A stretch of DNA of 64,000 bases from Botryllus schlosseri. Its lineage: Eukaryota. Each line of letters opens with the position of its first letter. The stretch's first letter is position 1. The stretch lies in assembly GCA_051294905.1 (NCBI GenBank), contig CM119382.1:7378001-7442000 (forward strand). The letters run 5' to 3'. The notes beneath the pieces were generated by a model, which saw nothing but the letters and a program-made list of their open reading frames with translations, made no database searches and was not told where the DNA came from. Shown piece after piece: positions 36,218-52,794 of this stretch. A program made the position numbers and the translations under genes.

Positions 36218-36236
36218 TCTCTTTTCTCCCCCTCTC
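36218..36236 (-). other. Candidate polypurine tract
   Basis: 19 consecutive purines GAGAGGGGGAGAAAAGAGA followed by TA-TG. This is the longest such run I found between the glycoprotein genes and the PBS. Confidence 0.65.
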
Positions 36237-36439: not shown

Positions 36440-36795
36440 TTTATAATTTTTAATTTGTTCTTCATAAATGTCAACATTTTCTTCATAAAGGTCAATTTTT
36501 TCTTCATAACTTTTAATATTTACTTCATAAATATCAATATCTTCTTTATGAATATCAATTTTTTCTTTATGAATTTCGATATTTTCTTCTTCATAAAGTT
36601 CAATTTTTTCTTCATAAATTTCTATAAATTCAGTTTTCTCTTTATGAATTACAATATATCTTTCATAAATTTCAAGATTTTCTTTATGAATATCAATATT
36701 TTCTCCATAAATTCAGTTTTCTCCTTATAAATTTTGATATTTTCGTTATGAAGATCAATTTTTTCCTTATGGATTTTAATTTTTGTAATTTTTAT
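36440..36795 (-). repeat. ~21-bp degenerate minisatellite, heptad-coding-like (I-D/E-I/L-Y/H-E/K-E-K/N)
   Basis: The minus strand reads ...KIDLYEENVDIYEEQ... with one frameshift and no start codon. Confidence 0.75.
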
Positions 36796-36892
36796 ACCTT
36801 ATTTACACACTTCGGGTTTTATTTTTTTAGAATGTTTTTGGTGGATTTGCTAATGCTATATTGTGTCACCTATATACATTATTTACATTACA

Positions 36893-37720
36893 ATTGCGTT
36901 ATCCCCGCCTTTCCCTTTATCACACTGGGAATGCCAATAACCACGTTCCTTTGACCTATCAACAAGAGGTGTCAAGGAAGACGAGGTCTTCCCATAGTTA
37001 ATGCAGGCGTTAGAAGTGCCAAGAACCAAGCTTATTGTTTCCTACGTTGCTACTTCCACAAGAACGCCCAATAAGCCCAGTTTCTTCTCGCCAAGTTGCA
37101 CAATATATACATGTTGAATGACACCTCTTACCCTATGGTAAGTGCCAATCGGTGTCAATCTTAGAATAGATAGGGATGCCATGAGGCAGGGACAGAAAAA
37201 AGTCACAAATTTTCATTAAAATTCACATAGTTATTTACAGATTCACACAATTTTTATTTTCATTTTTTTATTTTATATATATATACCGATATTTACAGAC
37301 ACTAAAAGATATTGCGTTATCCCTGCCTTCCTCTCCGTCTAACTGGGAATGCCAATGGCCACGTTACTTCAGCGCACTCTTAAGATTTCCAAAGGCCTTT
37401 GGATCACTCACAGAATGCCCAAAGAGAACGCGGTCTTCCCATAGTTAATTTTAGGTGCGGTACGAATTGAGAAGTGCCATGAACCAAGCCTGTTGTCCCC
37501 CATGTTACCCCTAGCATAAGGATGCCCAACAAGTCCGGTTTCTTCTATCAAAATCGCACGCTGTGTATATATATATATGCAGGTGAAAGACCCCTCTTAC
37601 CATATGATGAGCGCACGCTGTGCATATGCACAGGTGAAGGACCCCTCTTATCATACGATAAGTGCCAAGCGGTGTCCTTCGAATTTACCGACTAGGAGAG
37701 GTGCCGTGAGGCAGAGAAAA
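36893..37720. repeat. Two diverged ~310-410-bp direct units with block-wise conservation
   Basis: Shared blocks in order at 36893-37200 and 37311-37720: TTGCGTTATCCC, ACTGGGAATGCCAAT, GTCTTCCCATAGTTAAT, AGAAGTGCCA-GAACCAAGC, GAC-CCTCTTA, AAGTGCCAA-CGGTGTC, TGCC-TGAGGCAG. Confidence 0.8.
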
Positions 37721-38387
37721 ACAAATTAAATTACTTACAAATATACGCGACTATTTACAAATGCAACTTGTGACTCATTATAATTAACGATTGTAAAAAC
37801 CGTTATCGTCACAAGCTTCTCAAAATATAATATTAAACTCTTCCCTTTAATCAATATATAAATAATGTACAACTACTGAGCAAGACGTAGAATGCGGATG
37901 CGGTACTGTGCGGGCGGGGAGCAGAACGGGCAAAACTCAATAACCTCGTAACAAGAAAATTTAAATAAATAAAAGATTAGCAAAAATATTTCATATTGTA
38001 CACAAGGTGATTCTTCACGGGATGGGTGGCTATCAAGTTTATCGCGCGAAGTTAATCAACTTCTACTACTCATTATAACTGGACACCGTGACCGACGATA
38101 AACGATACCCTTATTGAAACGTAGACACCTTCTAGGCTTATTAAGCGGTTGCCATTTGCTTGTTCAGTATCGTCACATGATTGTTTATGTAACTATATAA
38201 TAATTGCGTATACATAATAAAATAAAATACAAGAATACGGCTTCTACTTTCGGGCTATTCCAAAGTTCCACCGTATTCTGGCTCTAACACTTTTTCCGTT
38301 TAGTTTGGCTTGACAGGGGTGCCGAATTGATAAAGTTGTCCTAAGTCCCTGCCAGCCAGTTCTATCATTCTAATAAAGACAAAATTC

Positions 38388-38639
38388 CTACCCGACGCTG
38401 CTTTCAGCGTTCTCTACCGGTTCTAGCGTTGGGCGTGGAGGCGGATGTTGCGGTGACGTTGTCGGATTGGTGTCGTCTCCCTGTGGCTGCGACTGTTGGT
38501 CCTCGTGATTTCTAGCTGGATCGATAAGCTTCTCTATTTCCACCTTCAGTTGTTCTCTATACGAGGGTGATAACGTCTCCACCCATTCGCGCATTTCGCT
38601 GAGGTTCATTGCGGATACGCACAGAGGCAGGTCACACAT
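38388..38639 (-). CDS. Accessory ORF, 83 aa, unknown function
   Basis: ATG start, co-oriented with the cassette, amphipathic helix followed by a Pro/Gln-rich tail. Confidence 0.5.
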   Translation of the reverse strand: MCDLPLCVSAMNLSEMREWVETLSPSYREQLKVEIEKLIDPARNHEDQQSQPQGDDTNPTTSPQHPPPRPTLEPVENAESSVG

Positions 38640-38777
38640 TTTGAATAGCTCAGGTTTTTATTCTCCGTTTAATAATTCCTTATATTTCCTTATATTTCCT
38701 TAATACAAATCAGTACAGTTCACGAAAATGTGAGCACGAAACAATAATACACAGAAGCAACGACACACAATTAAGTT

Positions 38778-39341
38778 CTAGTGGCACATTTCCATATATT
38801 CATCTCCTAGGGAATCTAGACCAGACTCGTCTCGACCGTCTATTTCCAAGAATAGGCCCACGTCAAAGTTTTCTTCTAGGGTCTGTATTGTTGGGGCATC
38901 GGGAGACCAATTGTTCTCCAGAAATTCGTCCACTTCCATCTCGTTTGCGCATAGCAAACTCAAACCCTTCAAGGAAGCACTCAAGCTCTTGTACGCTCGC
39001 CAGGATTCCTTGTTCGACTTATAGCGAGTCATTGTGAGTACGGCATTTGCGTGTGCCATCCGCGCAAGTTTTGCACGTTTTTTATCCGCCTTGATTTTGT
39101 TCATTTTTTCGGAATGAGATAGTTTTAGGTTTTTTGGGAGTTTTGCCATAGCCGCCTTAATATCTTCCCGAGTTATTACTACAGTCCACTTTCCCTTTTC
39201 CAATTTCTCATCTTCATCAATATGTTTAACATCTCTTCGTTTTATTTTCACACCAAATTTCCCATTTTTCAATCCTTCATTAGTCCATTCTTTGTCAATC
39301 GTATATATTTTCTCAACAGTTGGTAATCCGAATCTAGCCAT
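38778..39341 (-). CDS. Accessory ORF, 187 aa, Lys-rich, paralogous to neighbouring ORFs
   Basis: Long ATG ORF in AT-rich DNA that shares motifs with the 191-aa and 135-aa ORFs. Confidence 0.7.
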   Translation of the reverse strand: MARFGLPTVEKIYTIDKEWTNEGLKNGKFGVKIKRRDVKHIDEDEKLEKGKWTVVITREDIKAAMAKLPKNLKLSHSEKMNKIKADKKRAKLARMAHANAVLTMTRYKSNKESWRAYKSLSASLKGLSLLCANEMEVDEFLENNWSPDAPTIQTLEENFDVGLFLEIDGRDESGLDSLGDEYMEMCH

Positions 39342-39492
39342 TCCTGACGGATATCTAGTAATTCTCTTAATTTAATTCTTTTCCTTAAAAACAGATACAA
39401 TACGTCATGACACCAAAATAAGACACAAAACAAAGTTTCAAAAACAGTTTTTTTAATCAGTTTAAAACAGATTTAGCCTATCGTTTGAGGAG

Positions 39493-40068
39493 TCAAAACT
39501 CCAACCGCCGCATGACACGCGAAAGTTTCTTAGTTGTTTGTCGGGTCAGTCGTCTGTCCGAGATGTCTTGCTTACGCGGCGCTTTGTGCTTGATTTTCGG
39601 TCCATCTTTTGGTGCAGGGGTAGAGGCAGGAGGTGCAGGGGTAGAAAGCGCGATACCCAGGGAGGGAGCAAGGGGTGGCCAATGGGTTTTTATAAACTCA
39701 TTCATCTCCGTTTTGTCGATGGACCAAAATTTTAATTCCCCCTCTGTATCAAGAAATCTCTTATAATTTTCAGAGAATTCTTCTTGTGCTCCCTGGATCA
39801 TTTTAACCAAGTCCCCCCAATCTCCCTGGAGCGCATTTCTATCAAGTACGAGCGCTTCCATGGCTTCACATACTTCGATTTTTTTCATAAGTTTTCCTAC
39901 ACTGTCCGGGGTCCCTTGGTTCCTTATTTCTGACGTTTGGGCAACCTCAGCGATTTGAGAATCCGCAAGCCTTATTTTTACTGACCATTCGCCCGTCATT
40001 AGTTGTTCATTCTCCAAAATGGGCATAGTCGGGAATTCGTTCATTTCAGTGGACTCAGCCATTATCAA
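39493..40068 (-). CDS. Accessory ORF, ~190 aa (ATG at 40062), basic C-terminal tail
   Basis: TEMNEFIKTHWPPLAPSL aligns with MEVDEFLENNWSPDAPTI of the 187-aa ORF. Confidence 0.7.
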   Translation of the reverse strand: MIMAESTEMNEFPTMPILENEQLMTGEWSVKIRLADSQIAEVAQTSEIRNQGTPDSVGKLMKKIEVCEAMEALVLDRNALQGDWGDLVKMIQGAQEEFSENYKRFLDTEGELKFWSIDKTEMNEFIKTHWPPLAPSLGIALSTPAPPASTPAPKDGPKIKHKAPRKQDISDRRLTRQTTKKLSRVMRRLEF

Positions 40069-40140
40069 AGTTATTATACAATAGTTCTTTAAAATGAATA
40101 TAGTTTTTTACAGCACAGACATGAACGTTTACAATTACAA

Positions 40141-40548
40141 TTACAATTCCATATCTTCATCTAATGTTTCCCATACGCCAGTCACCGACAGTTCAGCTAT
40201 GGTAGTTACAGTCATGGTAGTGGTGGTACATGTCTCCCAGGGACGCCAGATTGCAACTTCAGTTTGTGACTTCCAATCTATGGCCATTGGGACATTCAGG
40301 AATTCTATCCATGCTTTTTCGACTTCTTCCCTTTCTACTTTCACCATTGCCATCTGGGTTGATGGTTCCGGTAAACTTTGGTTGGTAATTGAGAGGTCCC
40401 TCATTTTGGGAAACCTTGCTCTAGCCACCTCGAGGCCCCCCATGATTGGTTTCTCATCAATTCTTTCCAATACCACAACACATCTACCGGGCAACAGCTT
40501 TTCATCGCCCTCGATTGTATATATTTCCATAGTGGAGCGCACAGCCAT
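40141..40548 (-). CDS. Accessory ORF, 135 aa
   Basis: STMEIYTIEGDEKLLPGRCVVVLERID resembles PTVEKIYTID...LKNGKFGVKIKRRD of the 187-aa ORF. First ORF after the internal TATA. Confidence 0.65.
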   Translation of the reverse strand: MAVRSTMEIYTIEGDEKLLPGRCVVVLERIDEKPIMGGLEVARARFPKMRDLSITNQSLPEPSTQMAMVKVEREEVEKAWIEFLNVPMAIDWKSQTEVAIWRPWETCTTTTMTVTTIAELSVTGVWETLDEDMEL

Positions 40549-40758
40549 TATCTTGGTGACTAGTCAGTAGTTTAGCAATCAATCTTAATAGAATATCAAA
40601 TTGAAGTTATTTAATTTACAAAGGTTCACTTGATCTTATTACAATAGCTGTTGATCCTTATTCCTATGTTATAGCAACAGGCATGAGCAGCCTCTAGCCT
40701 AACCTTCCAACAGGTACAGCCATACCAGAGTGAACACCAGTTGCTATTCTGCCCTACC

Positions 40759-41470
40759 TATATACTCAAACCTAGGAAGTGAAGTGAGGATGTGAGTTAC
40801 CAATGACAGGAAATGGTTGCCTCGGCTTGATGTGAAGCCGTGCATCACAGCTTTGTGAAAGTCCAACAACAGGAAATGTTTTTATCGACTCAACCCAAAG
40901 TTGCGCGTCATAGTTGTTATGATATGCCATCAATAGGAAATGTTTGCCTCTACTAGACGAGAAGTCGTGCGTCACAGCCTCATGAAATGCGAACAACAGG
41001 AAATGCTGTCATCGATTTGATACCAAGTCGCGCATCACAACTTCATGATATGTGAATGACAGGAAATGTTTTCCTTGACCTAACCCAAAGTCGCGCGTCA
41101 CAGTTGCTATGATATGCTATCAACAGGAAATGTTTACCTCTACTTGACGAGAAGTCGTGCGTCACAGCCTCATGAAATGCGAACAACAGGAAATGTTTTT
41201 CACGACTTAACGCGGAGTCGTGCGTCATAGTTGTTGTAATAGGCCATCAACAGGAAATGTTTACCCCGACTTGACATAAGGTCGTGCGTCATAGCTGTTG
41301 TAATAGGCCATCAACAGGAAATGTTTACCCCGACTTGACATAAGGTCGTGCGTCATAGCTGTTGTAATAGGCCATCAACAGGAAATGTTGTTTCCTTCCT
41401 AACACGAAGTCGTGCGTCACAGTTCCATGAAACGCGAACTACAGGAAATGATGTTTCCTGACTTGATACG
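40759..41470 (-). promoter_or_regulatory. Internal promoter: eleven 63-64-bp tandem repeats plus a TATATA box
   Basis: (C/T)AGGAAATG recurs at ~40807, 40870, 40934, 40997, 41060, 41124, 41187, 41251, 41315, 41379 and 41442, mostly with a G(T/C)GCGTCA-type motif. TATATA lies at 40759-40764, upstream of the accessory cassette. Confidence 0.65.
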
Positions 41471-42234
41471 CGCGCGTTGTTTCGTTGATTGGTTTTATTG
41501 ATTAGTAAACGCACAACCTGAACAGGTCAACTGCCGATTGACACAACAAGATTCCTAACGTGCTCGCTACAAGTTATAAAGACATAACAATGTGTTAATG
41601 TACTCACAGGTTCCTCCGTTAGTATGCCTGCGTCCATTCCATGTCTTCGTCTTCGTCCTCTGTCCTTGTCCGTGACCTCTGATCCCTACGACGTCTTAAC
41701 GCTAACTGACGTTCCCTATGCCTATGCCTATGGTTACCGACCCGGCATGCTGACTGGACCCGCCAGCATGCCGGCCCTCATGCCTATAACTACGACTATT
41801 CCTAAGTCTACCCCTATGCTTATGTCTAAGCTTAGGCCTACACGTCCTACCCCTAGCTATGCCTAGCGTTAACTGACCGTGTTCCTTCGCTGTCGTTGCT
41901 TATATGGCCTTCGAGCGTAACCGCGTCGTTGTACGTCATCGTGCGAAGGAAGAAGTTCCGAAAATCTGCTAAGAAAAAATGCTAGTCCTATAGTTATGCC
42001 TAAGTTAATCCGTACGCCTAAACCTATAGCTACACAACGCCTAATGCTAAGCTAGCCCATACCTATCTTTATTCCTAGACGACCTACCCCTAGCTATCCC
42101 TAGACCTAAGTCTAAGTCTACGGCCTATGCATTAGCCTATGGCCAGCCGACCCTATAGCCTAAGCTATCTATTCTAGACGACCTACCCCTAGCTATCCCT
42201 AGATCTAAGTGACCCTATGTCTATTCTGTAGCCG

Positions 42235-42322
42235 TTTATATAGCTTTCGGGTGGAAGTGGGAACGCGTCATTGTGCGTCATTGTGCGTCAATCCGCATTA
42301 TTTCGTGCGTCATTGTGCGTCA
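42235..42322 (-). promoter_or_regulatory. Second candidate internal promoter (TATATAAA plus five TGACGC motifs)
   Basis: TATATAAA at 42242-42235. GCGTCA occurs five times on + within 42264-42322. Confidence 0.55.
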
Positions 42323-42582
42323 ATCTGTGCTGATGTAATGCTTGAAAGTATGTGATTACGTTATCGCTTTTTGCCGTAGGTTTCTCTAGGTCAAAGTAGG
42401 TTTATTCTCGGTCAGACCAGTTCGCCTTCGGTTAAACTGGGCTGTCATCGGCCAACTCTGTTAATTATCGTTAATTTTCGTTAATTATCGTCAATTATTG
42501 TTAATTCTTGGTAATTATTGTTAATAATTGTTCAACACAGTCATTCATCTTTTCAGAAAAAAATTTCTCTTTACCATCGCAC

Positions 42583-45500
42583 TTATTTTTTCGGTTTCAA
42601 ATTCGGTCCTTCAGCCAACGTCGTCATCGTTGTCATCGCCGTCCATACTTGTTCATTGTTCCTTCTTTGAACCTTTTTTACCTGCCCCATAGATCTATTT
42701 TTTCCGTATTTCATACCCGCAATCCACAAAAATACTATTACTGCCACCAGCCCCATCGCCACAACGATTGAATATTGTGTGTTCGGGCCCCGTTTAACAA
42801 TCCCTCCCCCGGTATCTATCGTAGGGGAAAAGATATGTCTTACCGAATACTGCTCCTCCATCTGTAGCAGCTCCTTCAGTCTGTCGTAGTAGCCGAAACC
42901 ATCCTGGGACGGTTTCCCAGAATCCTGGGCACGCGGCGCTCTGGTGAGATTCGAAAAGGGCCCTGCCATCCCCCGCGTCACTTGTCCAGATCGCGAGACG
43001 GTGTCGGTGGTTGTCGGCCCGGCGACCCACGACGTTCGAAAGGGACTGGTCGGTCGCACTCGTCGTTCCGAGGCTTGGGCCTGCGTTGTTGCCAGAAACC
43101 GTGTAGAAACAGCGGTCGCCGCACCCATCGTCGTCGAGACCCGGGGAATAATTGGCACCGCGATTGGGGTCGTCCCTGCTGGTGTTGTCGTGGAGGAGAG
43201 CGTCGAAGAGGCGACAGCGTATGAGCCGATATTCGACAGAACTGATTCCGTCGCTACCGCGTTGGTGACGGAAGCCAACAATGTCCCCACCAATTGTTCC
43301 GTAGATAAGAGTTGTTCTCCGGTGATCATGAAAACCGTATCGCCAGGTGTAGCTTTACTCATAGCTCCGTCACTAGTCGACTCCACCGACGTGATGACGG
43401 GATTGGTCATCGTAGTCGCTTCCGGTGTTGTGGACGCAATCGTCGTAACAAGGTCATGTGTAGATCGCGGGGCAATACGTCCGGTGGTTAGTAGGCGTGT
43501 TGTTATGCCCGGTCCTGTCGTAGAGCTTTCCAAACTCCTTACTTCATCCGTCATGGCTCTGCTTATTGCTATGGTCGTCGGCGACTCGGGTATGGTGGCC
43601 TCTGTTGGCTGCTTTGGTCCGGTCGCCGAGAGATCCCAATGGAGGCGGGTAGTAATTTCCGAACGCGTAGGTTTCGTTAGAGAAAACCTTCTATGTACCG
43701 ACGCACCGGCCCCACCTTGCAAATTCGACAGTGTTCCAAAAAAACCCTTCGTTGGCCGTACAGTGTCGACGCGCTCCGCGGTCAGGTACAAATTCGGCGT
43801 CACGGTTTTCGCCGTGGTCGCCGTCGTTTGGCCCTGAGTGGCGGGCGTTCCTGTCCGAATAGACAAGAAAGTGACACTGTCCGTCGTCCACCGTTCAGCA
43901 TTCTCTGCAGCACCCGCAATTCTGGTAGTCTCCATCATTCGAGCACTAGTTGGTCTGACAGGCGTGGTCACAGATAAGGTTACGGTCGTTCCTCCCTTGC
44001 CGGACTCGGGGTCTCGGGGTGATGGAGTCGCGGTTGCGGCGGCCGCTGAAGATGCGGCAGTGGTCGAAGTGGTGTATTCGGCCAAAGTCGTCACTATTGT
44101 TGATTGTTCTGTAGACACTGGTATGCTCGTCTGTAGAGTAGTGTCCCGAGGAGTAGTAACCTTCGTCGTTGCCTGAGTAGTCGTCCTCGTGGGGTTTGTG
44201 CTCATTTCTGATACAGCCGGCGCATCTGCGGTGCCAGGGGAAGGCCCTGTCGGGGTTCGACCAAATGTCACAGGAGCGCCCGCTGCGGCAGGACTCCCGG
44301 TTGTTGCCATGGACGCCGTGGTTGTCTCGACCCGTTTCGTATACCCTACTGAATCTGCAGTAGTATCGCGGGGGGTCGATGTGAATTTGATCCCTTCGGT
44401 TTTCATCGTCGAATCCACCTGCGCCAGTTTCAAACTGGCCACACTGAATATGGCTGTAGGCGTCGTCGTAATCAAGGCTTCGGTTGTGGACATTGGCGGA
44501 ATGGACGTAGTGGGTCCCTCAGTAGACGCTTCCACCGCCGCAAACGCGGTCTCTTGATCGAGCAACGGCGTTCTTGGAGTTTGTTTACTGGTTATTTCCG
44601 AATATCTAAGGCGGGTAGTTGCGAGATACGTTGTGGTGTCAGGAAAAACGGTGTTCTCTGTGGTGACGACTGTAGTAGGGAGCCAGTACGTGCCCTCAGT
44701 TGTCCGCGGCGCTGTCGCTGGCGCTGTCGTAGGAATTGTCGTTGTTGTAATCGAAGTGCCAGGTTCGAACGAATTCATAGTGGCGTCCGTAATAGTTGCA
44801 GGTTCAAATACAGTTGTTTCTACCGTTGACCGTTCCGAAGCCACAGGTATTCGGGTCTGATGAGTAGTCTCTGGAAGAAGTGTGACCTTCGTTGTTTCCC
44901 AAGTAGTCATCTTCGTGAGTGTCGCGCTCATTTTTGGTACAACGGACACATCAGAGGTGCCCGTAAAAAACTCGGCCGAAGTTTGATTAGCTACTGTAGG
45001 AGGGCTCGTTGTAGTAGAACCGGACGTAGGTCGGGAGTCCGTTTGCAAGGTATCGCCAGTCCAGCTACTGGCGGTTGTTACCGGGCTTGTTTGTTGTGTC
45101 GTGAACGGTCCGGGCGCTGCCGGGGTTTGGGATTGCGTCGTCATGAGTATCTCAGTTGTACTAACATGAGTTGGCCAAGTACCGCTGCGAGTTGCCAGTC
45201 GGTGGTTCGTTGATTCGAATCCCGTCGTTGAGCTTACGGGAACTCTTACTGGTGTTGTTATTTTGACGCTAGTTTCCTGCGCAATCGTTGAAACCCCACT
45301 CGATGATAGAAACGTGGGTTGCGTACCCCTTGTGGTCGCAATCGTGGACCTGTGAACGAGTAGCCTATCAGATGTTTCTCCTAAGGCCACTGCAGAGTAC
45401 TCGTCACTATAATAGTCCCCGTAACCACTTTCGTTATACGCGGACTCGTACCAGCTGTTGTTGTAGTCGTAAGCGTACTCGTAGTAATCTTCATCGTAGG

Positions 45501-47277
45501 CAAAATCGGAATCTTCTTCCCGGTCGGCCTCGTACGGGGAGGTAGGAGTTGCACTGGCCGTACTAATTCGAGTACGGGGCGTAATTGGTGGCGGCAGCGG
45601 TTCTGCAACGGTCGTGACAGAATACGTAGCGTGAGGAATATACAACATTTTTCCTTGGCACAACAGGACCTTGTAGGCCGTCCTGGGTTTGAATAGTTTC
45701 AGCTCGAATTGGCGTGCTTCCCGCAACTTTTGTGTGGCCATAATATTTAGTAAAGCCATATTCACCTTATCGCGCTGTTTCTCACGAGTCTGGTTTACCC
45801 TGAGAGCCCATTGGAAAGGCAGAACTTCCACCGGTGTCAACGATTGATTCCAACCCGCACGATTTTCCCGCATCTTCGTTAGCGGAGCGGCTGCTTCCTT
45901 TAGAATTTGTCGTGTCTTCGTAACATAGAACAACCTCAGACGAGACAGCCAACCCTTTATGCCTTTCTCTCCTTGTTCCGACTCCATAGTGGTCGATGAC
46001 AACATGAGGGTCCCCTCTAACCAGTTGCAAGGAGGTTGTCCCGAGGACCAACCCTGAGGCATTGTCGCCTGGTTGCCAGTTTCCAACGCTGCTGCGCGTA
46101 TTCGGCCGAAACGGTGGTCTGCAAACACAGGTTGATTCCCATAGGGGTCGTACGTCACTTCCCCGGACATTAGAGTCACTTTTAGATTTCCTACTGCATT
46201 TCGGCATTTCTTTTTGTTCTTCTTCCGTTTACATCGCCGGCTGCCCTGCAGTAGGGTGGGAAAGTTTTTGTCATCGTTCAGTGTTTTGGCGTCCCTATTT
46301 AGGAACCTGATGAGCGCGTGAATCTTCCGTCTGTACCGGCCATGGCCATCGAAATTCACGGGCCTATCTCTAGGACCCGTCTTGTTTCGAGCTCGCAGCC
46401 AAACTAGGTCACCTTCCAACAGAGGCACTGGGACACCGCCCGGCCATTGGTTGTACGAGTCGGTCAGCTGTATGTCTGCATCAGTACCTCTAATACTGTC
46501 GTCGATTTCAAGAATCACGATATCCCGTCCTAGGGTATTGGCGATGAAACGGCGTCCAGCAATCGTGCATTCCACACACATCATTCCGCGAGATTCGGAG
46601 TTCGCACAGGTCTGAAACCGGTGCGTTTTAACTATCCATCCTTCAACCCCGTCCGAGCGAAACTCGCACGTCGATCTCACCGTCGCGTATTGTGCCAACA
46701 TATTCATAACTAATATTTTAAATACCGTTAGCACTTGTCGCATTCCAGGGTCGAGTGGGAAGGGTTGACCCGGAGTTTTTTCATGCTCCCAGGTGTGTAT
46801 TAATCCGAAGCTTTTATTGCGATGGTACGTGGTGTTCCCGAACAAAGCCCGCAAGGAGAGGTTCGGTAAGATTCCGGACATATTTCGATCACATCCACAT
46901 GCTCGTTCGTATTTACGCGCTGAGTCCCAATACCGAGCTCCGTGATTCAAATCTGCCAGTAATTTGTACAGTCGGCTACGGCCTGCTCGCATCTGCCCAA
47001 AGGTGGGTGATTCGACAAGTATCGGGAATCTCCGCAACGCCAAGCCTTCCGGCCATTTTCCAGATAGTCGAAACAGTTGATTCAGGCTTACTGTCCTCTG
47101 AACCTGGTCCTCCAGGAGCGTCCATCCCGTAAGGTTGAAATTTTCCATGTTTTCCGCGTGCATGACAGATAAGGGGAGTAGGGCTTCGTTGGTCTGGGGT
47201 TTCACGAGGCTCACACATATGACCATCAACAGGGTCTGCTCGGGCCCGCATCCATTCGGGTAGGTAGTTATCCGCAT
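42583..47277 (-). CDS. 1564-aa type I membrane glycoprotein: Env-SU-like N-terminal domain, Thr/Ser/Pro mucin stalk, TM, basic tail
   Basis: RYWDSARKYERACGCDR...PNLS is shared with the upstream Env. About 900 aa are T/S/P-rich. TM YSIVVAMGLVAVIVFLWIAGM. Confidence 0.85.
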   Translation of the reverse strand: MRITTYPNGCGPEQTLLMVICVSLVKPQTNEALLPLSVMHAENMENFNLTGWTLLEDQVQRTVSLNQLFRLSGKWPEGLALRRFPILVESPTFGQMRAGRSRLYKLLADLNHGARYWDSARKYERACGCDRNMSGILPNLSLRALFGNTTYHRNKSFGLIHTWEHEKTPGQPFPLDPGMRQVLTVFKILVMNMLAQYATVRSTCEFRSDGVEGWIVKTHRFQTCANSESRGMMCVECTIAGRRFIANTLGRDIVILEIDDSIRGTDADIQLTDSYNQWPGGVPVPLLEGDLVWLRARNKTGPRDRPVNFDGHGRYRRKIHALIRFLNRDAKTLNDDKNFPTLLQGSRRCKRKKNKKKCRNAVGNLKVTLMSGEVTYDPYGNQPVFADHRFGRIRAAALETGNQATMPQGWSSGQPPCNWLEGTLMLSSTTMESEQGEKGIKGWLSRLRLFYVTKTRQILKEAAAPLTKMRENRAGWNQSLTPVEVLPFQWALRVNQTREKQRDKVNMALLNIMATQKLREARQFELKLFKPRTAYKVLLCQGKMLYIPHATYSVTTVAEPLPPPITPRTRISTASATPTSPYEADREEDSDFAYDEDYYEYAYDYNNSWYESAYNESGYGDYYSDEYSAVALGETSDRLLVHRSTIATTRGTQPTFLSSSGVSTIAQETSVKITTPVRVPVSSTTGFESTNHRLATRSGTWPTHVSTTEILMTTQSQTPAAPGPFTTQQTSPVTTASSWTGDTLQTDSRPTSGSTTTSPPTVANQTSAEFFTGTSDVSVVPKMSATLTKMTTWETTKVTLLPETTHQTRIPVASERSTVETTVFEPATITDATMNSFEPGTSITTTTIPTTAPATAPRTTEGTYWLPTTVVTTENTVFPDTTTYLATTRLRYSEITSKQTPRTPLLDQETAFAAVEASTEGPTTSIPPMSTTEALITTTPTAIFSVASLKLAQVDSTMKTEGIKFTSTPRDTTADSVGYTKRVETTTASMATTGSPAAAGAPVTFGRTPTGPSPGTADAPAVSEMSTNPTRTTTQATTKVTTPRDTTLQTSIPVSTEQSTIVTTLAEYTTSTTAASSAAAATATPSPRDPESGKGGTTVTLSVTTPVRPTSARMMETTRIAGAAENAERWTTDSVTFLSIRTGTPATQGQTTATTAKTVTPNLYLTAERVDTVRPTKGFFGTLSNLQGGAGASVHRRFSLTKPTRSEITTRLHWDLSATGPKQPTEATIPESPTTIAISRAMTDEVRSLESSTTGPGITTRLLTTGRIAPRSTHDLVTTIASTTPEATTMTNPVITSVESTSDGAMSKATPGDTVFMITGEQLLSTEQLVGTLLASVTNAVATESVLSNIGSYAVASSTLSSTTTPAGTTPIAVPIIPRVSTTMGAATAVSTRFLATTQAQASERRVRPTSPFRTSWVAGPTTTDTVSRSGQVTRGMAGPFSNLTRAPRAQDSGKPSQDGFGYYDRLKELLQMEEQYSVRHIFSPTIDTGGGIVKRGPNTQYSIVVAMGLVAVIVFLWIAGMKYGKNRSMGQVKKVQRRNNEQVWTAMTTMTTLAEGPNLKPKK

Positions 47278-47358: not shown

Positions 47359-49941
47359 TTACTGTCGTATTATGGGTCTGCGCTGTTTGGTGTAAACGGG
47401 TGCGGACGTGATGAACATTGTTAATTGGGTACCAGTGTTTCGCTTCTGCACCCTTGATTTTAACTTAGGGCAGCATACGCTGTGATACCTAAAGCAGCAG
47501 AACAGGATGATTCCTGCCCCCAGAATGAGGGCCACGGGAAGTAGAATGGAACCCAAACCAGAGAACAGACCGCCCAATCCTTTTCCAAGTATGTCACCGA
47601 CTGCCCCGAGCCCCTTATGTAGCAAGGTTCCCGCGCCCTTCCCGACAGATTCTATAACACCTCCGGCTCCGTTCGCCATTTCTTCTATAGTTTTTCCGAA
47701 GTTCTTCATGAACTCCTCTCCCCCAGCAAACTCGAAGGGTTTCACTGACACGTTTTCATAGCGCCAGTCCGACATATTCATGTACACACTTTTATTGAGA
47801 TCTTCCCTCCATACCTGTATACCGAGATCCACTTCCTGTTGAGCCTGGTCCAGACGGAGCCGATTCGCCCGGAGTTTGTAGCCGATGTCATCCGTCTCAT
47901 TTACATAAGCATCTCTATAGGCGGTAAGCTGCTGAGCGTATTCCTGTACGCGCAACGTCCCCTGTTGAATTTGTGTCCGGTAAATTTTGCTCGCATCAAA
48001 AATCGACCTGCCCGTCAGATTGGTCAATTCTCTCATGACCAATCGATCGATGGCGAGTTCGGCTTCACTTTTTTCTTTAAAATTCTGAAACTGTGAGAGG
48101 GTCGCGGTGGCCTGTCGCAGTATCATTTGTCGGTTTCTTTCCATCATCCGTTGCATCCACACAAGCCGCTTATCAGTCAGTGATGCCCTGGCCTCCATGT
48201 TTGCGATCAACCGGTCCAGTTTGGTTTGTTGTGCCACCTGAAGCTGGGATAGCTCGTTTATTTTTATACCCAGTTCGGTTGATCGCTCCGTAGCCTGGAT
48301 CATCCTGTCATTGATTTGGTTACCTAGGTCTTCAGTCTCCTTGTGTAGTTTATCAGCAACAGTAGCCACCACGGCAATGGTGGCAATGGTGGCAAACAGA
48401 AGAAAGAGCAATCCGAAGAACCTTCTGTGCCTCTTCTTTTTAGTCAATCGTTGTCCGCGCCCCATTATGTCGCCCTTAATTTCTATCGGCCCTCCTGGAA
48501 AGCGTGGTCGGTTACGCTCCGGATCGAAGTGCACTTGGTTCCAAAAGGCAGCTTTCAATTCTGGACCCCCGACCGGATCATGACAGTGATTGTATCTTAT
48601 CCTTTCCACGCACATGGGATCACCGCTGAATAGAGAAGGATGCGCTCGCCATATTGGCAAAATGTTGGCAGGTGCCGGGGGCCTTGTAGCAAAATCGTCG
48701 AAAAAATCGTCCCAATTGCGACCTTGTTCGTCTTTGCCTTCCCAGTTTGGAAACGATGCCTGGATCCACCGTACCCTCCGAGGGAAATTCGTGGTTGGTA
48801 AATCCCCCCATCTACTGGTGTTTGCGGTCGGCCATAGGTTGCAGGAAGGAGGATGCGTAATACTCCGTATGCCATTCCGAGCAGGCGAGGACTGAAAGAC
48901 CCTCCAAAGGTATTCGTAATGTTCCTGGGTGATCAATCCCGCCATAGCACGGCAGTTCTGCATGGGCTGATACCGTCTTTCGAACGGGGAATCCGCACGG
49001 ATAGTATCCAGTTCCTGTATCACTATATCGGCCTGACTCGGCTCCAGGGCAGAGACGACCCCCGCAACGTCGCAGAAGACGCACGTGCCCTGAGAGCCAG
49101 ACGCCGTTGAGGATATCAGTTTTTTTATCCTCGCGCCGGTCTTCTGATCATAGGAAACGGACCAGGCATTATAGTAGGTTATATGATTCCGCCAGCAATG
49201 CGCAATGCGGGTGCTGCTGGCATTATATCTATTCAGTCGATTGACTCGGGTCCAGTTCCAGGTTTCTTCTGTCATTTGTTCTGTTCGACAGGTCGACCGA
49301 ACTGCTGAGAATTTCGCGAAGGTTCGCAACATGATCAATTTGAATTTGGTCATGGCCATCAAGGTATCGTTCACGTGAGACCACTCATCAACAGAAGAAC
49401 TAAGTGGGGGGTCCCACCTATTCCAGGTGTCTTCCCAGGTTTCGTCCCAAAACCATTGTAATCTGACTTTGTGTCCGATTGGTCGCACAAACAAGTTCTC
49501 CTGATTCAAAACCGCAAAGGAAAGGTTCGGCGAGATACGTCCCAGCCCGCGGTCGCACAGACAGGCCCTTTCAAAATCGCGCACGCCAGTCCAATATCGT
49601 CCTCGCGGAAACGCCATTTGTTGCAACGAGATTCGCTCAGCCACCACGTAGCCAAAAGATTGACTATGAAATAATTCCGGTCGTCTGTACACGTGTCGCT
49701 CCCTTGTCCCATTGAACATGGTCATCAGATCATAGTTCTCCCAATGCGTAGCATTGAGTTCAACCCAGTCTTCGGGCAGGGAACCATTCAGTTCACCCAG
49801 TTTACCTTGGGTAAAGGTCCGTCCTCTATCCGTTACAGCAACTGCGGATCCCTGCACGCCGACCGCCGTCGCAGGCAACAGGCTATGAGGTGGGCAAATG
49901 ATACCAACAATGATAGGAAGAATATAAGCAGCGTGGTCCAT
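47359..49941 (-). CDS. env: Envelope / class-I-like fusion glycoprotein (860 aa)
   Basis: Furin-type site KKRHRR followed by hydrophobic FFGLLFLLFATIATIAVVATVA. Long heptad-like region, Gly-rich membrane-proximal segment, TM ILLPVALILGAGIILFCCF, and several N-glycosylation sequons. Confidence 0.85.
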   Translation of the reverse strand: MDHAAYILPIIVGIICPPHSLLPATAVGVQGSAVAVTDRGRTFTQGKLGELNGSLPEDWVELNATHWENYDLMTMFNGTRERHVYRRPELFHSQSFGYVVAERISLQQMAFPRGRYWTGVRDFERACLCDRGLGRISPNLSFAVLNQENLFVRPIGHKVRLQWFWDETWEDTWNRWDPPLSSSVDEWSHVNDTLMAMTKFKLIMLRTFAKFSAVRSTCRTEQMTEETWNWTRVNRLNRYNASSTRIAHCWRNHITYYNAWSVSYDQKTGARIKKLISSTASGSQGTCVFCDVAGVVSALEPSQADIVIQELDTIRADSPFERRYQPMQNCRAMAGLITQEHYEYLWRVFQSSPARNGIRSITHPPSCNLWPTANTSRWGDLPTTNFPRRVRWIQASFPNWEGKDEQGRNWDDFFDDFATRPPAPANILPIWRAHPSLFSGDPMCVERIRYNHCHDPVGGPELKAAFWNQVHFDPERNRPRFPGGPIEIKGDIMGRGQRLTKKKRHRRFFGLLFLLFATIATIAVVATVADKLHKETEDLGNQINDRMIQATERSTELGIKINELSQLQVAQQTKLDRLIANMEARASLTDKRLVWMQRMMERNRQMILRQATATLSQFQNFKEKSEAELAIDRLVMRELTNLTGRSIFDASKIYRTQIQQGTLRVQEYAQQLTAYRDAYVNETDDIGYKLRANRLRLDQAQQEVDLGIQVWREDLNKSVYMNMSDWRYENVSVKPFEFAGGEEFMKNFGKTIEEMANGAGGVIESVGKGAGTLLHKGLGAVGDILGKGLGGLFSGLGSILLPVALILGAGIILFCCFRYHSVCCPKLKSRVQKRNTGTQLTMFITSAPVYTKQRRPIIRQ

Positions 49942-50062
49942 TGGGGCGGAATAGGAGGCTCAGGCCACTGCATAAGCTAGTTAGTATTTTACGAAAGTGT
50001 TCGGTTTATTGTCTGAAAAACACAAACAAAAGCGACTTTTTATGTCAGGCCAAGGGTTACGA

Positions 50063-51079
50063 CTAAAGCTTCACGGGGCACGCGTCGTACTTGTCAAAAC
50101 CGTACCGTGGGTCTCTATTTATGGTCCGCAGTAATTCCAGAAACCTGTCACGTTTCTGGTGTTGTCTTTTCCAAAGCCACTCCCCCACATAATCCGCCAA
50201 AAGGTGGCGTGCTAAGCCTCGGGACCGATGTAAATGGTACTTCAGCGAGCTCCAACATGCCTCCACGTCGTTAGTACAGACACCCTCGGGGCTTTTGAAG
50301 GCCGAGCTATGATCCACGATGCCATGCTTGTAGTCTCGTCCCCAGCTCTCTATTCCTTTATAAGAGGGGTAGGCATCGGTCAAAATCGTAGATCCACTGG
50401 CAACGTTGTCCACAATGAGTTGCTGAAACACCGCCGCCGTTCGATCAGCGGTTATTTCCACAAACATCTTCCCCGTCGCCTTGTCCACTCCTCCGAAAGC
50501 CCATATGGCTTTAATTGCCGGCTTGCCGGATGTAGCGGCTCGTCGTTTTGCCAAGTGAGTCTCGTCTAGGATAACACAACCTCCGACGCCTCCCAAGGGG
50601 CTTTTACTTCGCTGGAATTCAGCCGCGCAGATCTTCCGCAGTCGGCCACACCATATAACCACCGAACGCTTGCTGATTTCGGCTTCGTGGCCTATCTGAG
50701 TCTGTAGGGCGTCGTGGGCCCAAAAGTAGCACAATATTAATAATTTCGGGAGTTCTACCTTGCTACCCGCGAACAGCGAATGTTTGCGTATGGTCGCCGT
50801 AGTATTGCAAGGATTACACCTCCATCTCCAGCCATCGTCCATCGTTGTAGTCGTTTCTTCCTTCATTACCCGCTCACATTTACGGCACTTCATCTTTCGT
50901 ACCAACAGCCCATGATCTCTCATAAATAGTATGCAGTCGCGCACGTCTCGTAGTGCTCCCGACTCGACCAGGCGTAGTACGTTGTATGTCCTGCTTCGTT
51001 GACCTGCAGAAGTGGAATGATACGGTGTTCGTGGGTCGTAGGTTTGCGAGGAACCGCCTTTTTCTCGGCCGCGCTTCAC
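50063..51079 (-). CDS. IS1595/ISXO2-family (eukaryotic Merlin-type) DDE transposase
   Basis: Zn ribbon CRKC...CNPC, IRKHSLF, LDETHL, WAFGGVD, TDAYPSY, VDHS, TNDVEACWS. The reading frame is intact. Confidence 0.92.
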   Translation of the reverse strand: MKRGREKGGSSQTYDPRTPYHSTSAGQRSRTYNVLRLVESGALRDVRDCILFMRDHGLLVRKMKCRKCERVMKEETTTTMDDGWRWRCNPCNTTATIRKHSLFAGSKVELPKLLILCYFWAHDALQTQIGHEAEISKRSVVIWCGRLRKICAAEFQRSKSPLGGVGGCVILDETHLAKRRAATSGKPAIKAIWAFGGVDKATGKMFVEITADRTAAVFQQLIVDNVASGSTILTDAYPSYKGIESWGRDYKHGIVDHSSAFKSPEGVCTNDVEACWSSLKYHLHRSRGLARHLLADYVGEWLWKRQHQKRDRFLELLRTINRDPRYGFDKYDACPVKL

Positions 51080-52227
51080 TAATCAATTCTCTCTTATTTG
51101 TCCCCGTGCTATAGCTAGGTCAGGGTGTTTAATTCACTTGTTCCATATGAGACCTAGTGAATCTAATGCCCATATTTCCGATGTTCAAGTACATCATTGT
51201 TCATTTACTGGTAAAACACTGCACACGCCGATGTTTTCATGTTTCACCTAGGTGCCGTGTAAGTCTACGGCGTTTACTTCACTTGTACCAAATCAGCAGT
51301 AAGCATCCGAGCATAGTACTGTTATACAATACACAGTGTGCACAGCAAAAATATGCAGCAAAGCAAGGACAATGAAGACGAACCAAGTGGAACAGTATTA
51401 CATCACAGCCAATGCAAATCATGGACCATGACAGTATTCTTCAACAACAACAACGACAACAGAGGAAGGTGTAGCAAGTGAAACAGTATTACATCACAGT
51501 CATTACAAATTATACCTATTTCAGTATTTTTCAACAAGAAAATTCAATTTTATATTAAACGTAATCCAACTGGCAAGTGCTACACTTTTGTAAAAGGTAA
51601 TCTGTATATGAAAAGTGTCGTAAGCGTTCGGAGTGAAGTGAAGGTGACTGTCCGTACCATCCCTAGAGTGAAGAACATACGATTACAGGCTATAACATGA
51701 AAACAGTTGAGACGCAAGTCCTGCACCGAGAATAGGAAACTATAATGTCAATAAAAATCAAAATATTATACTGCATGGAATTACGCAGGACCTTTAGTCG
51801 TAGGACAATCTAACGATGTACAGATTGGCAGAGATATGGTATTGTAGGCTACTTAATACCGGAATTGATTGGCGTACTTTGGCAAACGCAACTGTGAAAA
51901 GAAGCAATATGAAATGCAATGAAACGCAACATGTATGTGACAGTGAGTTTTGTGATTGATGGCAAGGCTTGACATGTATATAGGGCGTTAGGGCCGTCAA
52001 GACGTTGGAATATATGCATAGAATTTGAAAAGTTACGGGGCAAGCAATTGTGTAATACAAAGTAAAAATGCATAGACCAGCGTCAAAGATATCAAACACA
52101 GTTTCATCAGGATTGGTCTAAATCAATTCAGTTTTGTGGAAAAGAAAATGTTCAGCCCATGATTGAAAGAGAAAAGCAGGAATAAATATAGTAAGTAGCA
52201 AATACAGAATTCGAACACAAAAACTTC

Positions 52228-52421
52228 TCAAGCGCGGTAAATTTTCATTGATTCACAGACTGTAGTTTTACAAGCGAGACATTTTGTAATGTTTCCGGCG
52301 CATTCACTGCAGCAAACCACGTGACCGCATGGCAGAAACATCGTGTCTGATTTTTTGTCGCGGCATTTTCTGCAGGTCAGCGTTTCTTGCAGCTCCCTGA
52401 AACTTTTCAGAATACTTGAAT
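52228..52421 (-). CDS. Terminal exon of an IAP-type gene encoding a C-terminal RING finger
   Basis: LQETLTCRKCRDKKSDTMFLPCGHVVCCSECAGNITKCLACKTTVCESMKIYRA-stop, an IAP-like C3HC4 RING. Acceptor ttttacag at 52422. Confidence 0.88.
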
Positions 52422-52794
52422 CTGTAAAATGTACAAATATTGTATTTAATCCGAAATGCATGGAGGGATGATATAAATTATAAATCGATGTAATATATTT
52501 CAAGTTTGAATCAAAATATTGACCATAACAACAGGCCATTAGATTGATAATATTGGTCGTCAATTTCGGCTGTTATTTGAGTTGTTGTTGCTTTGCTTTG
52601 CATAATATTACGCCTATTACGATTGGTGCACATCGATATTGGGACATAACTTTGATTATGATGGAAAAAGTCGAGAAGCTGGAAATGTCTGATTTGATTT
52701 GGGTCAGCGAGTGCTATTGGAATCTGATTCGAAAACCGAACCCCGCTAGCTAGTCGCTGAGTCGGTTATTTTATGGAATGGTAAGATACTACCC

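What the first reader, a model, noticed from the sequence alone, without database searches (positions are those of the whole stretch)
50063..51085. Intact Merlin/IS1595 transposase packed as the first gene of the glycoprotein cassette, apparently needing an upstream exon
Seen: the stop codon is ~90-120 bp from the env starts, the strand is the same, and no Merlin-type GG...CC TIR pair encloses the gene alone. The frame is closed by TGA at 51083-51085 and has no ATG until FMRDHG. A good acceptor (CATTCCACTTCTGCAG/GT) sits at 51004/51003. Inference: it is expressed by splicing from a leader that lies upstream only in the circular form, which would couple transposase expression to the episomal state. 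Alternatives are trans-splicing or the internal ATG.
Basis: partly seen in the sequence, partly recalled or inferred. Interest (0 to 1): 0.8.

Follow-up and report, generated by a model that had tools for sequence, protein, structure and literature searches.

The report
Merlin transposase inside integrase-less enveloped retroelement
A cut-and-paste (Merlin/IS1595-type) transposase gene, kept intact by strong selection, sits between the envelope-like genes of a virus-like retroelement that has no integrase or LTRs, so it may serve as that element's insertion enzyme; how it is translated is unsettled.

Summary
The sequence facts hold. Window 51082-50063 (minus strand) is an intact 338-codon frame for an IS1595/Merlin DDE transposase with zinc ribbon and D172/D235/E273. 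It has no TIR pair of its own. It lies 121 nt upstream of a class-I-fusion-like glycoprotein gene. It has no in-frame ATG before Met53.

New here:
- Its only close relatives (58-89% aa, Logan runs SRR25569773-84) keep the same order, transposase then glycoprotein genes. Synonymous sites are saturated and dN/dS is 0.03-0.07.
Upstream, the copies differ only by indels that break the reading frame.
- It is not the first gene. Relatives have a large same-strand gene upstream, and the window keeps only that gene's truncated, interrupted membrane-anchor tail.
- The glycoprotein is homologous to the env of locus L009, which follows a gag-pol of the same integrase-less, LTR-less RT-RNaseH-Tpt1 family as the window's gag-pol. 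The window copy is therefore permuted or truncated.

An upstream exon is plausible (about 0.5). A leader that exists only in a circular form is untested. The chimera itself is the notable result. I found no description of it in the literature searched.

The parts
50063..51082 (-). Transposase gene: open frame after the upstream stop, through its own stop codon (338 codons). The selected, structured core is residues 31-338 (50989-50066).
   Evidence: for the ORF and family match. for dN/dS. AlphaFold2 pLDDT 90.4, with residues 1-30 disordered; best fold matches are retroviral integrases and Mos1 transposase.
51004..51020 (-). Pyrimidine tract plus CAG, a 3' splice-site-like motif. Coding constraint begins at 51003. 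The phase is the same in the window, L001 and L002.
   Evidence: The pattern CTTNYGCAG also occurs before the ORF860 ATG.
51132..51162 (-). Conserved non-coding island ATTCACTAG..CAAGTGAAT, a 9-12 bp hairpin or palindrome with an ATG in its loop. It is the best-conserved block upstream of the transposase.
   Evidence: invariant columns; 17/20, 13/20 and 16/20 identical per pair; stem kept in all three sequences.
51194..51400 (-). Remnant of an upstream same-strand gene 'X': a hydrophobic anchor plus a short tail. Its 5' part is missing and it is interrupted by two in-frame stops. This is one broken gene.
   Evidence: translation; homology to the last 31 codons of the upstream gene in L001; the upstream gene in relatives is at least 613 and at least 546 aa.
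49942..50062 (-). Transposase-glycoprotein intergenic region, with two invariant blocks: TTTGTGTTTTT(A)CAG and CTTATGCAGTGGCC.
47359..49941 (-). ORF860, an envelope-like glycoprotein. Layout: signal-like N-terminus, 13 N-glycosylation sequons, RxKR site at 504 followed directly by a hydrophobic peptide (506-532), long predicted helices, and a membrane anchor at 788-824.
   Evidence: (low-confidence model, helices only). BLASTP 6e-27 to the env of L009; 66-70% identity to the genes downstream of the transposase in L001 and L002.
42583..47277 (-). ORF1564, a second membrane-anchored glycoprotein-like gene. Its N-terminal domain is paralogous to that of ORF860.
33604..42582 (-). Non-structural middle region. 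It holds an AATAAA signal, TATA-like boxes with TGACGCA clusters, a palindrome, several tandem-repeat arrays, and three paralogous-looking small ORFs (40548-38778) plus an 83-aa ORF.
   Evidence: No Pfam match.
30307..33603 (-). Small membrane ORF (33603-33292) and a gag-like ORF (33291-30307) with a weak CCHC knuckle.
   Evidence: Homology to the gag-like ORFs of L003, L008 and L009.
26651..30313 (-). pol: DTG protease motif, RT (YIDD), RNase H and a C-terminal Tpt1/KptA domain. No integrase. It overlaps gag in the -1 frame.
   Evidence: (relatives).
52230..52440 (-). Neighbour, not part of the element: a host-like terminal exon encoding a C3HC4 RING finger, on the same strand. It places the element's upstream edge between about 51400 and 52230.
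   Evidence: zf-C3HC4_3, E 5e-11.

Best explanation
The gene encodes a functional Merlin/IS1595-type DDE transposase that is a long-standing component of one lineage of an envelope-carrying retroelement without LTRs or integrase. The element's pol has protease, RT, RNase H and Tpt1 domains. Its RT is closest by sequence to cauliflower mosaic virus RT among solved structures.

The element makes DNA by reverse transcription but has no retroviral integrase. The most likely role of the transposase is to insert that DNA into chromosomes. This is an inference. In the full element the gene lies between membrane-glycoprotein genes: X, then the transposase, then ORF860, then ORF1564.

Translation of the selected core begins at or just after a conserved 3' splice-site-like CAG at 51004/51003. 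The most likely route is a spliced subgenomic mRNA whose upstream exon supplies the AUG, by analogy with retroviral env-type mRNAs. This too is an inference, and no donor has been identified.

The window copy is permuted or truncated. Its order is X tail, transposase, two glycoprotein genes, promoter-like region, gag, pol. Whatever lies upstream of the transposase in a complete genome is missing on that side here.

Shown: the identity, intactness, selection, gene order and family links. Inferred: the integrase role, the splicing, and any circular form.
For: - Identity and intactness.
- Selection: dN/dS is 0.03 and 0.07, with pS 0.72-0.80, including residues 31-52.
- Conserved gene order in every close relative.
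- No TIRs.
- The glycoprotein block and gag-pol are one kind of element: L009 carries gag, pol and then an env homologous to ORF860.
- No integrase anywhere in the 25-kb array.
- Relatives of pol carry a different nuclease, Exo_endo_phos (L003), or none (L008 and L009).
- No LTRs.
- A head-to-tail tandem at 100% identity in L003.
- Constraint starts at the CAG.
- A conserved pyrimidine-tract CAG also lies before ORF860.
- Proteins of the ~40% relatives start 0-10 residues before the conserved block.
Against: - No transcript evidence and no donor.
- L001 has in-frame ATGs of its own. P0001's predicted start lies 24 codons before the block, and its start codon is unknown.
- The large gene upstream of the transposase in relatives could not be identified, so pol-X adjacency is unproven.
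- The pol-fragment search found no close pol in the Logan runs that hold the cassette. The search's length window and the likely omission of cut genes make this weak evidence.
- No element-end TIRs or target-site duplications were seen, so no footprint of transposase-mediated insertion exists for this copy.
Confidence: 0.55

Rival explanations
1. Ordinary local start. The transposase has its own promoter or initiator at the conserved island and starts at a nearby in-frame ATG, as in L001. The N-terminal ~30 residues are a disordered, unconstrained tail. The window copy, like L002, has simply lost frame continuity with that ATG. It is then translation-defective, or makes only an N-terminally shortened protein from Met53.
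For: - L001 is open from the island ATG and also has an ATG directly before the conserved block.
- Residues 1-30 are disordered, pLDDT about 50.
- An ACTAG-containing motif lies 12-40 nt before the ATGs of four other ORFs of the array and of the island ATG.
- The ~205 nt between the island ORF and Met53 hold no ATG in any frame in the window, by reading.
Against: - Three of four copies lack a continuous standard-code frame from that ATG, while none of the sampled 308-codon cores has a stop. Random damage should hit the core about seven times more often than the linker.
- Linker indels are all frame-breaking, so the linker is not coding in the family.
- Met53 is not conserved and lies inside a confident helix.
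- The ACTAG motif is not kept before ORF860 in L001 or L002.
Confidence: 0.3
2. The leader or donor exists upstream of the transposase only in a circular episome (or across a tandem junction), so transposase expression reports the episomal state.
For: - In the window, the only promoter-like region (TATA-like boxes plus TGACGCA clusters at 42.35-41.9 kb) lies downstream of the transposase on its strand.
- The gene order is permuted relative to L009.
- The family lacks LTRs and occurs as an identical head-to-tail tandem.
- The pol is closest to CaMV RT.
Against: - Relatives have linear DNA upstream of the transposase carrying a large same-strand gene, and the window has lost it. Absence of an upstream leader here reflects the state of this copy, not a design feature.
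- The donor-like GTGAGT after the promoter-like region is out of phase.
- No circle-junction sequence is known.
Confidence: 0.2
3. An independent Merlin transposon that inserted into the element, or next to it, by chance.
For: The protein is a typical Merlin/IS1595 DDE enzyme. The nearest named relative is a Ciona intestinalis protein at 34% identity.
Against: - No TIRs or target-site duplication.
- The intergenic distances and flanking genes are the same in copies whose synonymous sites are saturated.
- The flanking non-coding blocks are conserved.
Confidence: 0.03
4. The cassette belongs to a different, larger virus-like element (for example a DNA-virus-like array), and its position next to gag-pol in the window is coincidental.
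For: - Transposases at ~40% identity sit in dense same-strand arrays with unrelated neighbours: a UQ_con gene and a homeodomain-like gene.
- No contig shows pol and the transposase together.
Against: - ORF860 is homologous to the env that directly follows a gag-pol of the window's family in L009.
- In the window, all ORFs from 51.4 to 26.6 kb are on one strand, the two blocks are similarly GC-rich, and host-like sequence lies outside.
Confidence: 0.1

Closest known systems
Merlin superfamily / IS1595-family transposases (defining features as in PMC8101967)
   Same: DDE_Tnp_IS1595 catalytic domain. DDE spacing of 63 and 38 residues. Size about 310 aa. The nearest named relative is an animal protein (Ciona intestinalis LOC100181297, 34% identity).
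   Different: The gene is not in a single-gene unit bounded by TIRs, and no 5'-GG TIRs or 8-9 bp target duplications were found. It has an N-terminal CxxC...CxxC zinc ribbon, which that paper says described Merlin elements lack. It is embedded between glycoprotein genes of a retroelement.
Teratorn and relatives (piggyBac transposon fused with a herpesvirus; PMC5601938, PMC5822658, PMC10175614)
   Same: A virus-like element that carries a cut-and-paste DDE transposase as a stable, selected gene, presumably for chromosomal insertion.
   Different: Here the partner is a reverse-transcribing, envelope-carrying element of about 25 kb, and the transposase is Merlin-type. Teratorn is bounded by piggyBac TIRs. 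No TIRs were found here.
Caulimoviridae and endogenous pararetroviruses (PMC11363490, PMC8256270)
   Same: RT-RNase H pol without integrase, and no LTRs. Integrated copies are permuted or tandem. CaMV RT is the best solved-structure match of pol (E 2.2e-19).
   Different: The host context is animal-like. The element has envelope-type glycoproteins, a Tpt1 domain on pol, a very large gag and an added DDE transposase. A circular genome has not been shown.
Envelope-carrying Ty3/gypsy elements (errantiviruses and metazoan relatives; PMC13524379)
   Same: gag, then pol, then env. The env has a class-I-fusion-like layout, and env is expected to be expressed from a spliced subgenomic RNA.
   Different: Those elements have LTRs and an integrase. 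That paper does not contain the words transposase, Merlin or circular.
Kuafuorterviruses (PMC11673190)
   Same: A recently recognised animal reverse-transcribing lineage, with Exo_endo_phos present sporadically.
   Different: They have LTRs, an integrase and an I/V/L-ADD motif in RT. The window's pol has YIDD, no LTRs and no integrase.

Membership tests
Merlin / IS1595 transposase superfamily | DDE_Tnp_IS1595 catalytic domain | tested here: met
   Pfam PF12762 scores 41.9 bits against a cut-off of 27. There are 5404 homologues at E<=1e-3. NCBIfam IS1595 scores 64 bits, below its bacterial cut-off of 75.
Merlin / IS1595 transposase superfamily | Intact D-D-E triad with about 50-70 residues between the first two acidic residues | tested here: met
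   D172, D235 and E273 are invariant or >=90% conserved in alignments A1, A2 and A4. In the model they lie on strand 168-177, after strand 231-235, and on helix 270-285.
Merlin / IS1595 transposase superfamily | Terminal inverted repeats of 24-462 bp beginning 5'-GG | tested here: not met
   No credible inverted pair lies around the gene, the cassette or the 25-kb array, nor in L001, L002, L004, L005 or L010. The window copy is truncated, so TIRs at the ends of a complete element remain possible.
Merlin / IS1595 transposase superfamily | 8-9 bp target-site duplication | not testable with these tools
   The ends of the element are not defined to the base, and no empty site is available.
Merlin / IS1595 transposase superfamily | Autonomous unit with a single transposase gene | tested here: not met
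   The gene is flanked at 121 nt and about 190 nt by same-strand glycoprotein genes or their remnant, here and in relatives.
Ortervirales retroelement (LTR-retrotransposon or retrovirus type) | RT plus RNase H polymerase with an aspartic protease and gag | tested here: met
   RVT_1 9e-19 and RT_RNaseH_2 8.5e-19. The LADTGS and YIDD motifs are read. The gag CCHC knuckle scores 20.6 bits against a cut-off of 20.8, which is borderline.
Ortervirales retroelement (LTR-retrotransposon or retrovirus type) | Integrase (rve) in pol | tested here: not met
   No rve hit in pol, gag, the glycoprotein ORFs or the small ORFs. It is also absent from the relatives P0007-P0014.
Ortervirales retroelement (LTR-retrotransposon or retrovirus type) | Long terminal repeats | tested here: not met
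   No flanking direct repeats in the window or in the 13.8-kb relative L009.
Caulimoviridae-like pararetrovirus | Integrase-less RT-RNase H pol and no LTRs | tested here: met
   As in the two rows above. The best PDB match of pol is 8R0S, which is CaMV RT.
Caulimoviridae-like pararetrovirus | Circular double-stranded DNA genome transcribed into a terminally redundant RNA | not testable with these tools
   Only indirect hints exist: the permuted order in the window and the head-to-tail tandem in L003.
Kuafuorterviruses | LTRs, an integrase and an I/V/L-ADD motif in RT | tested here: not met
   The RT motif is YIDD. There are no LTRs and no integrase.
Retroviral-type spliced subgenomic mRNA | A donor in a 5' leader joined to an acceptor before the downstream gene | tested here: inconclusive
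   Acceptor-like motifs are conserved before the transposase core and before ORF860. No donor was identified and no RNA data were available.

The most novel reading that the evidence does not exclude
A lineage of animal pararetrovirus-like, enveloped reverse-transcribing elements has replaced the missing integrase with a captured Merlin transposase. The transposase is expressed from a spliced message whose first exon becomes contiguous only across the closed (circular or concatemeric) genome. The element would then switch between an infectious or episomal retroviral cycle and transposase-driven chromosomal insertion. This would be a third way, besides integrase and target-primed reverse transcription, for a retroelement to enter chromosomes.
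Probability: 0.15. Interest if true: 0.92.

Novelty: new variant of a known kind. Interest (0 to 1): 0.75.

Why it matters
Retroelements are classified largely by how their DNA enters the genome: integrase, tyrosine recombinase, or the endonucleases of target-primed reverse transcription. An envelope-carrying retroelement without integrase or LTRs that keeps a Merlin cut-and-paste transposase under strong selection would be a new combination. It would be the reverse-transcribing counterpart of the herpesvirus-piggyBac fusion Teratorn.

The same pol family has other module combinations in relatives. One pol carries an Exo_endo_phos nuclease. Envs are of the alphavirus-E1 type or the ORF860 type. 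The Tpt1 domain on pol is conserved. Together these form a natural series for asking how virus-like elements exchange insertion and entry modules.

The translation-start puzzle can be tested directly with existing or new RNA data.

Tried and rejected
1. TIR, LTR and palindrome searches around the gene, the cassette and the whole array found nothing credible.

2. A local mini-intron from the island ATG to the conserved CAG was rejected. It is out of frame in both the window and L001, judged by reading. Enumerating every GT..AG pair gave 25-38 in-frame, stop-free combinations per sequence, which is about what chance predicts. None was conserved in position with a credible acceptor.

3. A ribosome-shunt-like long stem over the leader was rejected. 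The fold z-score is -0.27, and only the local island hairpin is conserved.

4. Pol-transposase fusion proteins were rejected. The long hits P0041, P0046 and similar are concatenated IS1595 domains without RT.

5. The upstream gene X is not the pol C-terminus. Its tail has no similarity to the ends of pol, gag or the glycoproteins.

6. Searches of the metagenome and viral contig collections gave only 24%-identity hits or nothing.

7. The structure of ORF860 was predicted at pLDDT 34, so no fold search was run on it.

8. Rfam found nothing in the window.

9. ACTAG as a gene-start motif is enriched in the window but not kept before ORF860 in L001 or L002. It was demoted to a note.

10. The run accessions were not found in any paper, so the host species stays unknown.

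11. The DNA of four key Logan contigs could not be fetched because the files were too large.
Full report
**1. What is at 50063-51085**

On the minus strand a frame opens after the TGA at 51085-51083 and runs 338 codons to the stop at 50065-50063.
- It matches Pfam DDE_Tnp_IS1595 (41.9 bits, cut-off 27). It matches NCBIfam IS1595 at 64 bits, below that model's bacterial cut-off of 75.
- In alignments with 6, 10 and 52 relatives, D172, D235 and E273 are invariant or >=90% conserved. So are the four cysteines of an N-terminal zinc ribbon, C65, C68, C88 and C91.
- An AlphaFold2 model built on 53 sequences has mean pLDDT 90.4. The three acidic residues lie on strand 168-177, just after strand 231-235, and on helix 270-285. 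This is the canonical RNase-H-fold layout.
- The best solved-structure fold matches are retroviral integrases and Mos1 transposase. TM-scores are about 0.3, so this is a generic likeness.
- A search of 1.84 billion representatives found 5404 homologues. Beyond the gene's own clade the nearest are about 40% identical. The nearest named one is a Ciona intestinalis protein at 34%.

**2. It is not a nested Merlin insertion**

Its close relatives number five proteins (58-89% identity), all from Logan assemblies of runs SRR25569780 and SRR25569784. Every contig shows the same same-strand neighbours.
- The transposase is followed after about 90-270 nt by a large ORF.
- In L001 and L002 that ORF is 66-70% identical to the window's ORF860.
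- A third large ORF follows.
- The one ORF860 homologue found by protein search, in run SRR25569776, is likewise followed by a large ORF.

Between the window, L001 and L002, synonymous sites are saturated (pS 0.72-0.80) while pN is 0.09-0.15, giving dN/dS of 0.03 and 0.07. Such old, selected, syntenic copies without TIRs exclude a chance insertion.

**3. It is not the first gene of the cassette**

In the transposase frame, window 51400-51194 encodes a hydrophobic segment and a short tail that end about 190 nt before the conserved CAG. The last 31 codons are homologous to the end of an upstream gene in L001. In the window this remnant has lost its 5' part and is interrupted by two in-frame stops.

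In relatives the upstream gene is large, at least 613 aa and at least 546 aa. I could not identify it. The DNA of those contigs was not retrievable, and its tail resembles no other protein end in the window. Its anchor-plus-tail ending is the same layout as in ORF860 and ORF1564, so it may be a third glycoprotein. This is an inference.

A host-like RING exon at 52440-52230 on the same strand bounds the element on that side.

**4. What the surrounding element is**

All large ORFs from 51.4 to 26.6 kb are on the minus strand.
- ORF860 has a signal-like N-terminus and 13 sequons. An RxKR site is followed directly by a hydrophobic peptide, then long predicted helices and a membrane anchor. This is a class-I-fusion-like layout (the model is low confidence).
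- ORF1564 shares its N-terminal domain with ORF860 and is also anchored.
- A 9-kb region follows. It holds an AATAAA, TATA-like boxes with TGACGCA clusters, tandem repeats and small paralogous-looking ORFs.
- Then come a small membrane ORF, a 994-aa gag-like ORF and a 1220-aa pol in the -1 frame. The pol has a DTG protease motif, RT (YIDD), RNase H and a C-terminal Tpt1/KptA domain, but no integrase.
- No integrase or recombinase domain occurs in any ORF of the array, and there are no LTRs.
- The pol's best solved-structure match by sequence is 8R0S, cauliflower mosaic virus RT.

The pol family exists elsewhere.
- RT-RNaseH-Tpt1 pols without integrase occur at 35-47% identity in ENA assemblies.
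- L009 (ERZ22157276) carries gag, pol, a CUB ORF and an 890-aa env that is homologous to ORF860 (BLASTP 6e-27 over 603 residues, through the basic cleavage-like site and the hydrophobic peptide). It has no repeats of 30 nt or more in 13.8 kb. This ties the window's glycoprotein block to its gag-pol block as one kind of element, and it gives the canonical order gag, pol, env.
- L003 carries two 100%-identical head-to-tail units. Its pol has an added Exo_endo_phos nuclease and its env is of the alphavirus-E1 type.
- L008's pol ends after Tpt1, as the window's does.

The insertion and entry modules therefore vary among relatives. The Merlin transposase is the variant found in the window's lineage. 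Since this lineage has no other nuclease or integrase, I infer that the transposase is its insertion enzyme. That is an inference, not shown.

Relative to L009, the window copy is permuted (env block first, then gag-pol) and lacks most of gene X.

**5. The translation-start problem**
- Proteins of the ~40% relatives begin 0-10 residues before the conserved block that starts at window residue 31.
- Residues 1-30 of the window frame are disordered in the model. Order begins at about residue 31, and Met53 lies inside helix 46-55.
- Residues 31-52 show the same selection as the rest of the protein (pS 0.69-0.78, pN 0.10-0.13), and Met53 is Leu in two relatives. The internal ATG is therefore not the family's start.
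- In a three-way DNA alignment, all indels between the copies upstream of the CAG have lengths of 1 or 13 nt. None occur downstream of the CAG, and the CAG is in the same phase in all three.
- The tract before it is pyrimidine-rich and conserved.
- The transposase-ORF860 spacer holds an invariant TTTGTGTTTTT(A)CAG and an invariant CTTATGCAGTGGCC. Acceptor-like signals thus precede both genes.

These points favour an exon boundary.

Against it:
- No donor was found.
- The local mini-intron from the island ATG is out of frame.
- The donor-like GTGAGT near 41607 is out of phase.
- L001 has in-frame ATGs of its own, including one directly before the block. P0001's predicted start lies 24 codons before the block, with an unknown start codon.

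Under the standard code, the window and L002 have no continuous frame from the conserved island ATG. Counting only: the window has a net frame change plus stops in that leader, and L002 has two in-frame stops. The 308-codon cores have none. Random decay should hit the core first, so I read the leader as non-coding in the family. A start-defective window copy remains a serious rival.

**6. The circular-form idea**

In the window as it stands, the only promoter-like region lies downstream of the transposase. The lack of LTRs, the tandem in L003 and the permuted order all fit a closed or concatemeric DNA form. But relatives show ordinary linear DNA, carrying gene X, upstream of the transposase. 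The missing upstream sequence here is therefore a property of this truncated copy. Coupling of expression to an episome is possible but unsupported (about 0.2).

**7. Conserved non-coding features**

A 31-nt island at 51162-51132 forms a hairpin or palindrome that is kept in all three sequences, with an ATG in its loop. Its role is unknown. It could be a promoter or initiator, a protein-binding site or an RNA hairpin.

**8. Novelty**

Literature searches found no description of a retroelement with a Merlin/IS1595 transposase, nor of this RT-RNaseH-Tpt1 family.
- Kuafuorterviruses differ: they have LTRs, an integrase and an I/V/L-ADD motif in RT.
- The closest analogue in kind is Teratorn, a herpesvirus fused with piggyBac.

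I rate the chimera a new variant of a known kind, a virus-transposon fusion.

Noticed in passing
window 26684-27085 (minus), C-terminus of pol: A Tpt1/KptA RNA 2'-phosphotransferase domain is fused after RT-RNase H (Pfam 1.3e-06; PDB Tpt1 hits down to 6.9e-07). It is kept in the relatives P0007, P0009, P0011 and P0014. Its role in a retroelement is unexplained.
   Followed up: partly
L003:1-13000 (ERZ22157276 ctg12771l): Relatives of the window's gag-pol occur as two 100%-identical head-to-tail units. Their pol carries an Exo_endo_phos nuclease, and their 895-aa env matches alphavirus E1 (5e-19). The second unit is interrupted by a DDE_3 transposon.
   Followed up: partly
L009:855-11153 (ERZ22157276 ctg6416l): Order: gag, pol, a 158-aa CUB-domain ORF, an env homologous to window ORF860, and a 129-aa ORF. 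No direct or inverted repeats of 30 nt or more occur in 13.8 kb.
   Followed up: yes
window 41742-41774: A 33-nt near-perfect palindrome (16-nt arms, 1-nt spacer) lies inside the promoter/leader-like region, between a TATA-like box and a GTGAGT.
   Followed up: no
window 41900-42410 and 40793-41460: After the ORF1564 stop come an AATAAA, two TATA-like boxes within an 83-nt repeat, and clusters of TGACGCA motifs. A tandem array of 64/190-nt units follows, and each unit again carries the TGACGCA motif.
   Followed up: no
window 38778-40548 (minus): Three consecutive small ORFs (135, 191 and 187 aa) share similar motifs, plus an 83-aa ORF. None matches a Pfam family.
   Followed up: partly
window 29191-29563 (minus, pol N-terminal region): Three copies of a 133-nt repeat encode Cys/His-rich units between the protease motif and RT.
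   Followed up: no
window 49968-49981; L001 about 1330; L002 about 1595: An invariant CTTATGCAGTGGCC lies before the ORF860 ATG. In the window its ATG opens a 45-codon overlapping frame that includes a hydrophobic stretch.
   Followed up: partly
window, minus strand, 26000-51600: ACTAG occurs 17 times (about 29 expected). Four copies lie 16-40 nt before the ATGs of ORF860, ORF1564 and two small ORFs. One lies 12 nt before the island ATG ahead of the transposase. The motif is not kept before ORF860 in L001 or L002.
   Followed up: partly
window 51374-51422 and 51465-51513: A 49-nt duplication (82% identity) lies at the upstream edge of the element, overlapping the start of the gene-X remnant.
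   Followed up: no
window 12147-18073 and 53040-61849: Collinear direct repeats, diverged to 72-85% identity, flank the whole region. They hold several units bounded by inverted repeats.
   Followed up: no
window 59622-60926: A 1.3-kb unit has 139-nt inverted ends (98% identity) and a 177-aa ORF with a weak GIY-YIG match (E 0.0026, below the cut-off).
   Followed up: no
contigs of P0043 (SRR25569784) and L010 (SRR23343704): Transposases at ~40% identity also sit in dense same-strand gene arrays, but with different neighbours: a ubiquitin-conjugating enzyme gene and a homeodomain-like ORF.
   Followed up: partly
window 52230-52440 (minus): A host-like terminal exon encodes a C3HC4 RING finger (5e-11). 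It lies about 0.8-1 kb upstream of the element on the same strand.
   Followed up: partly
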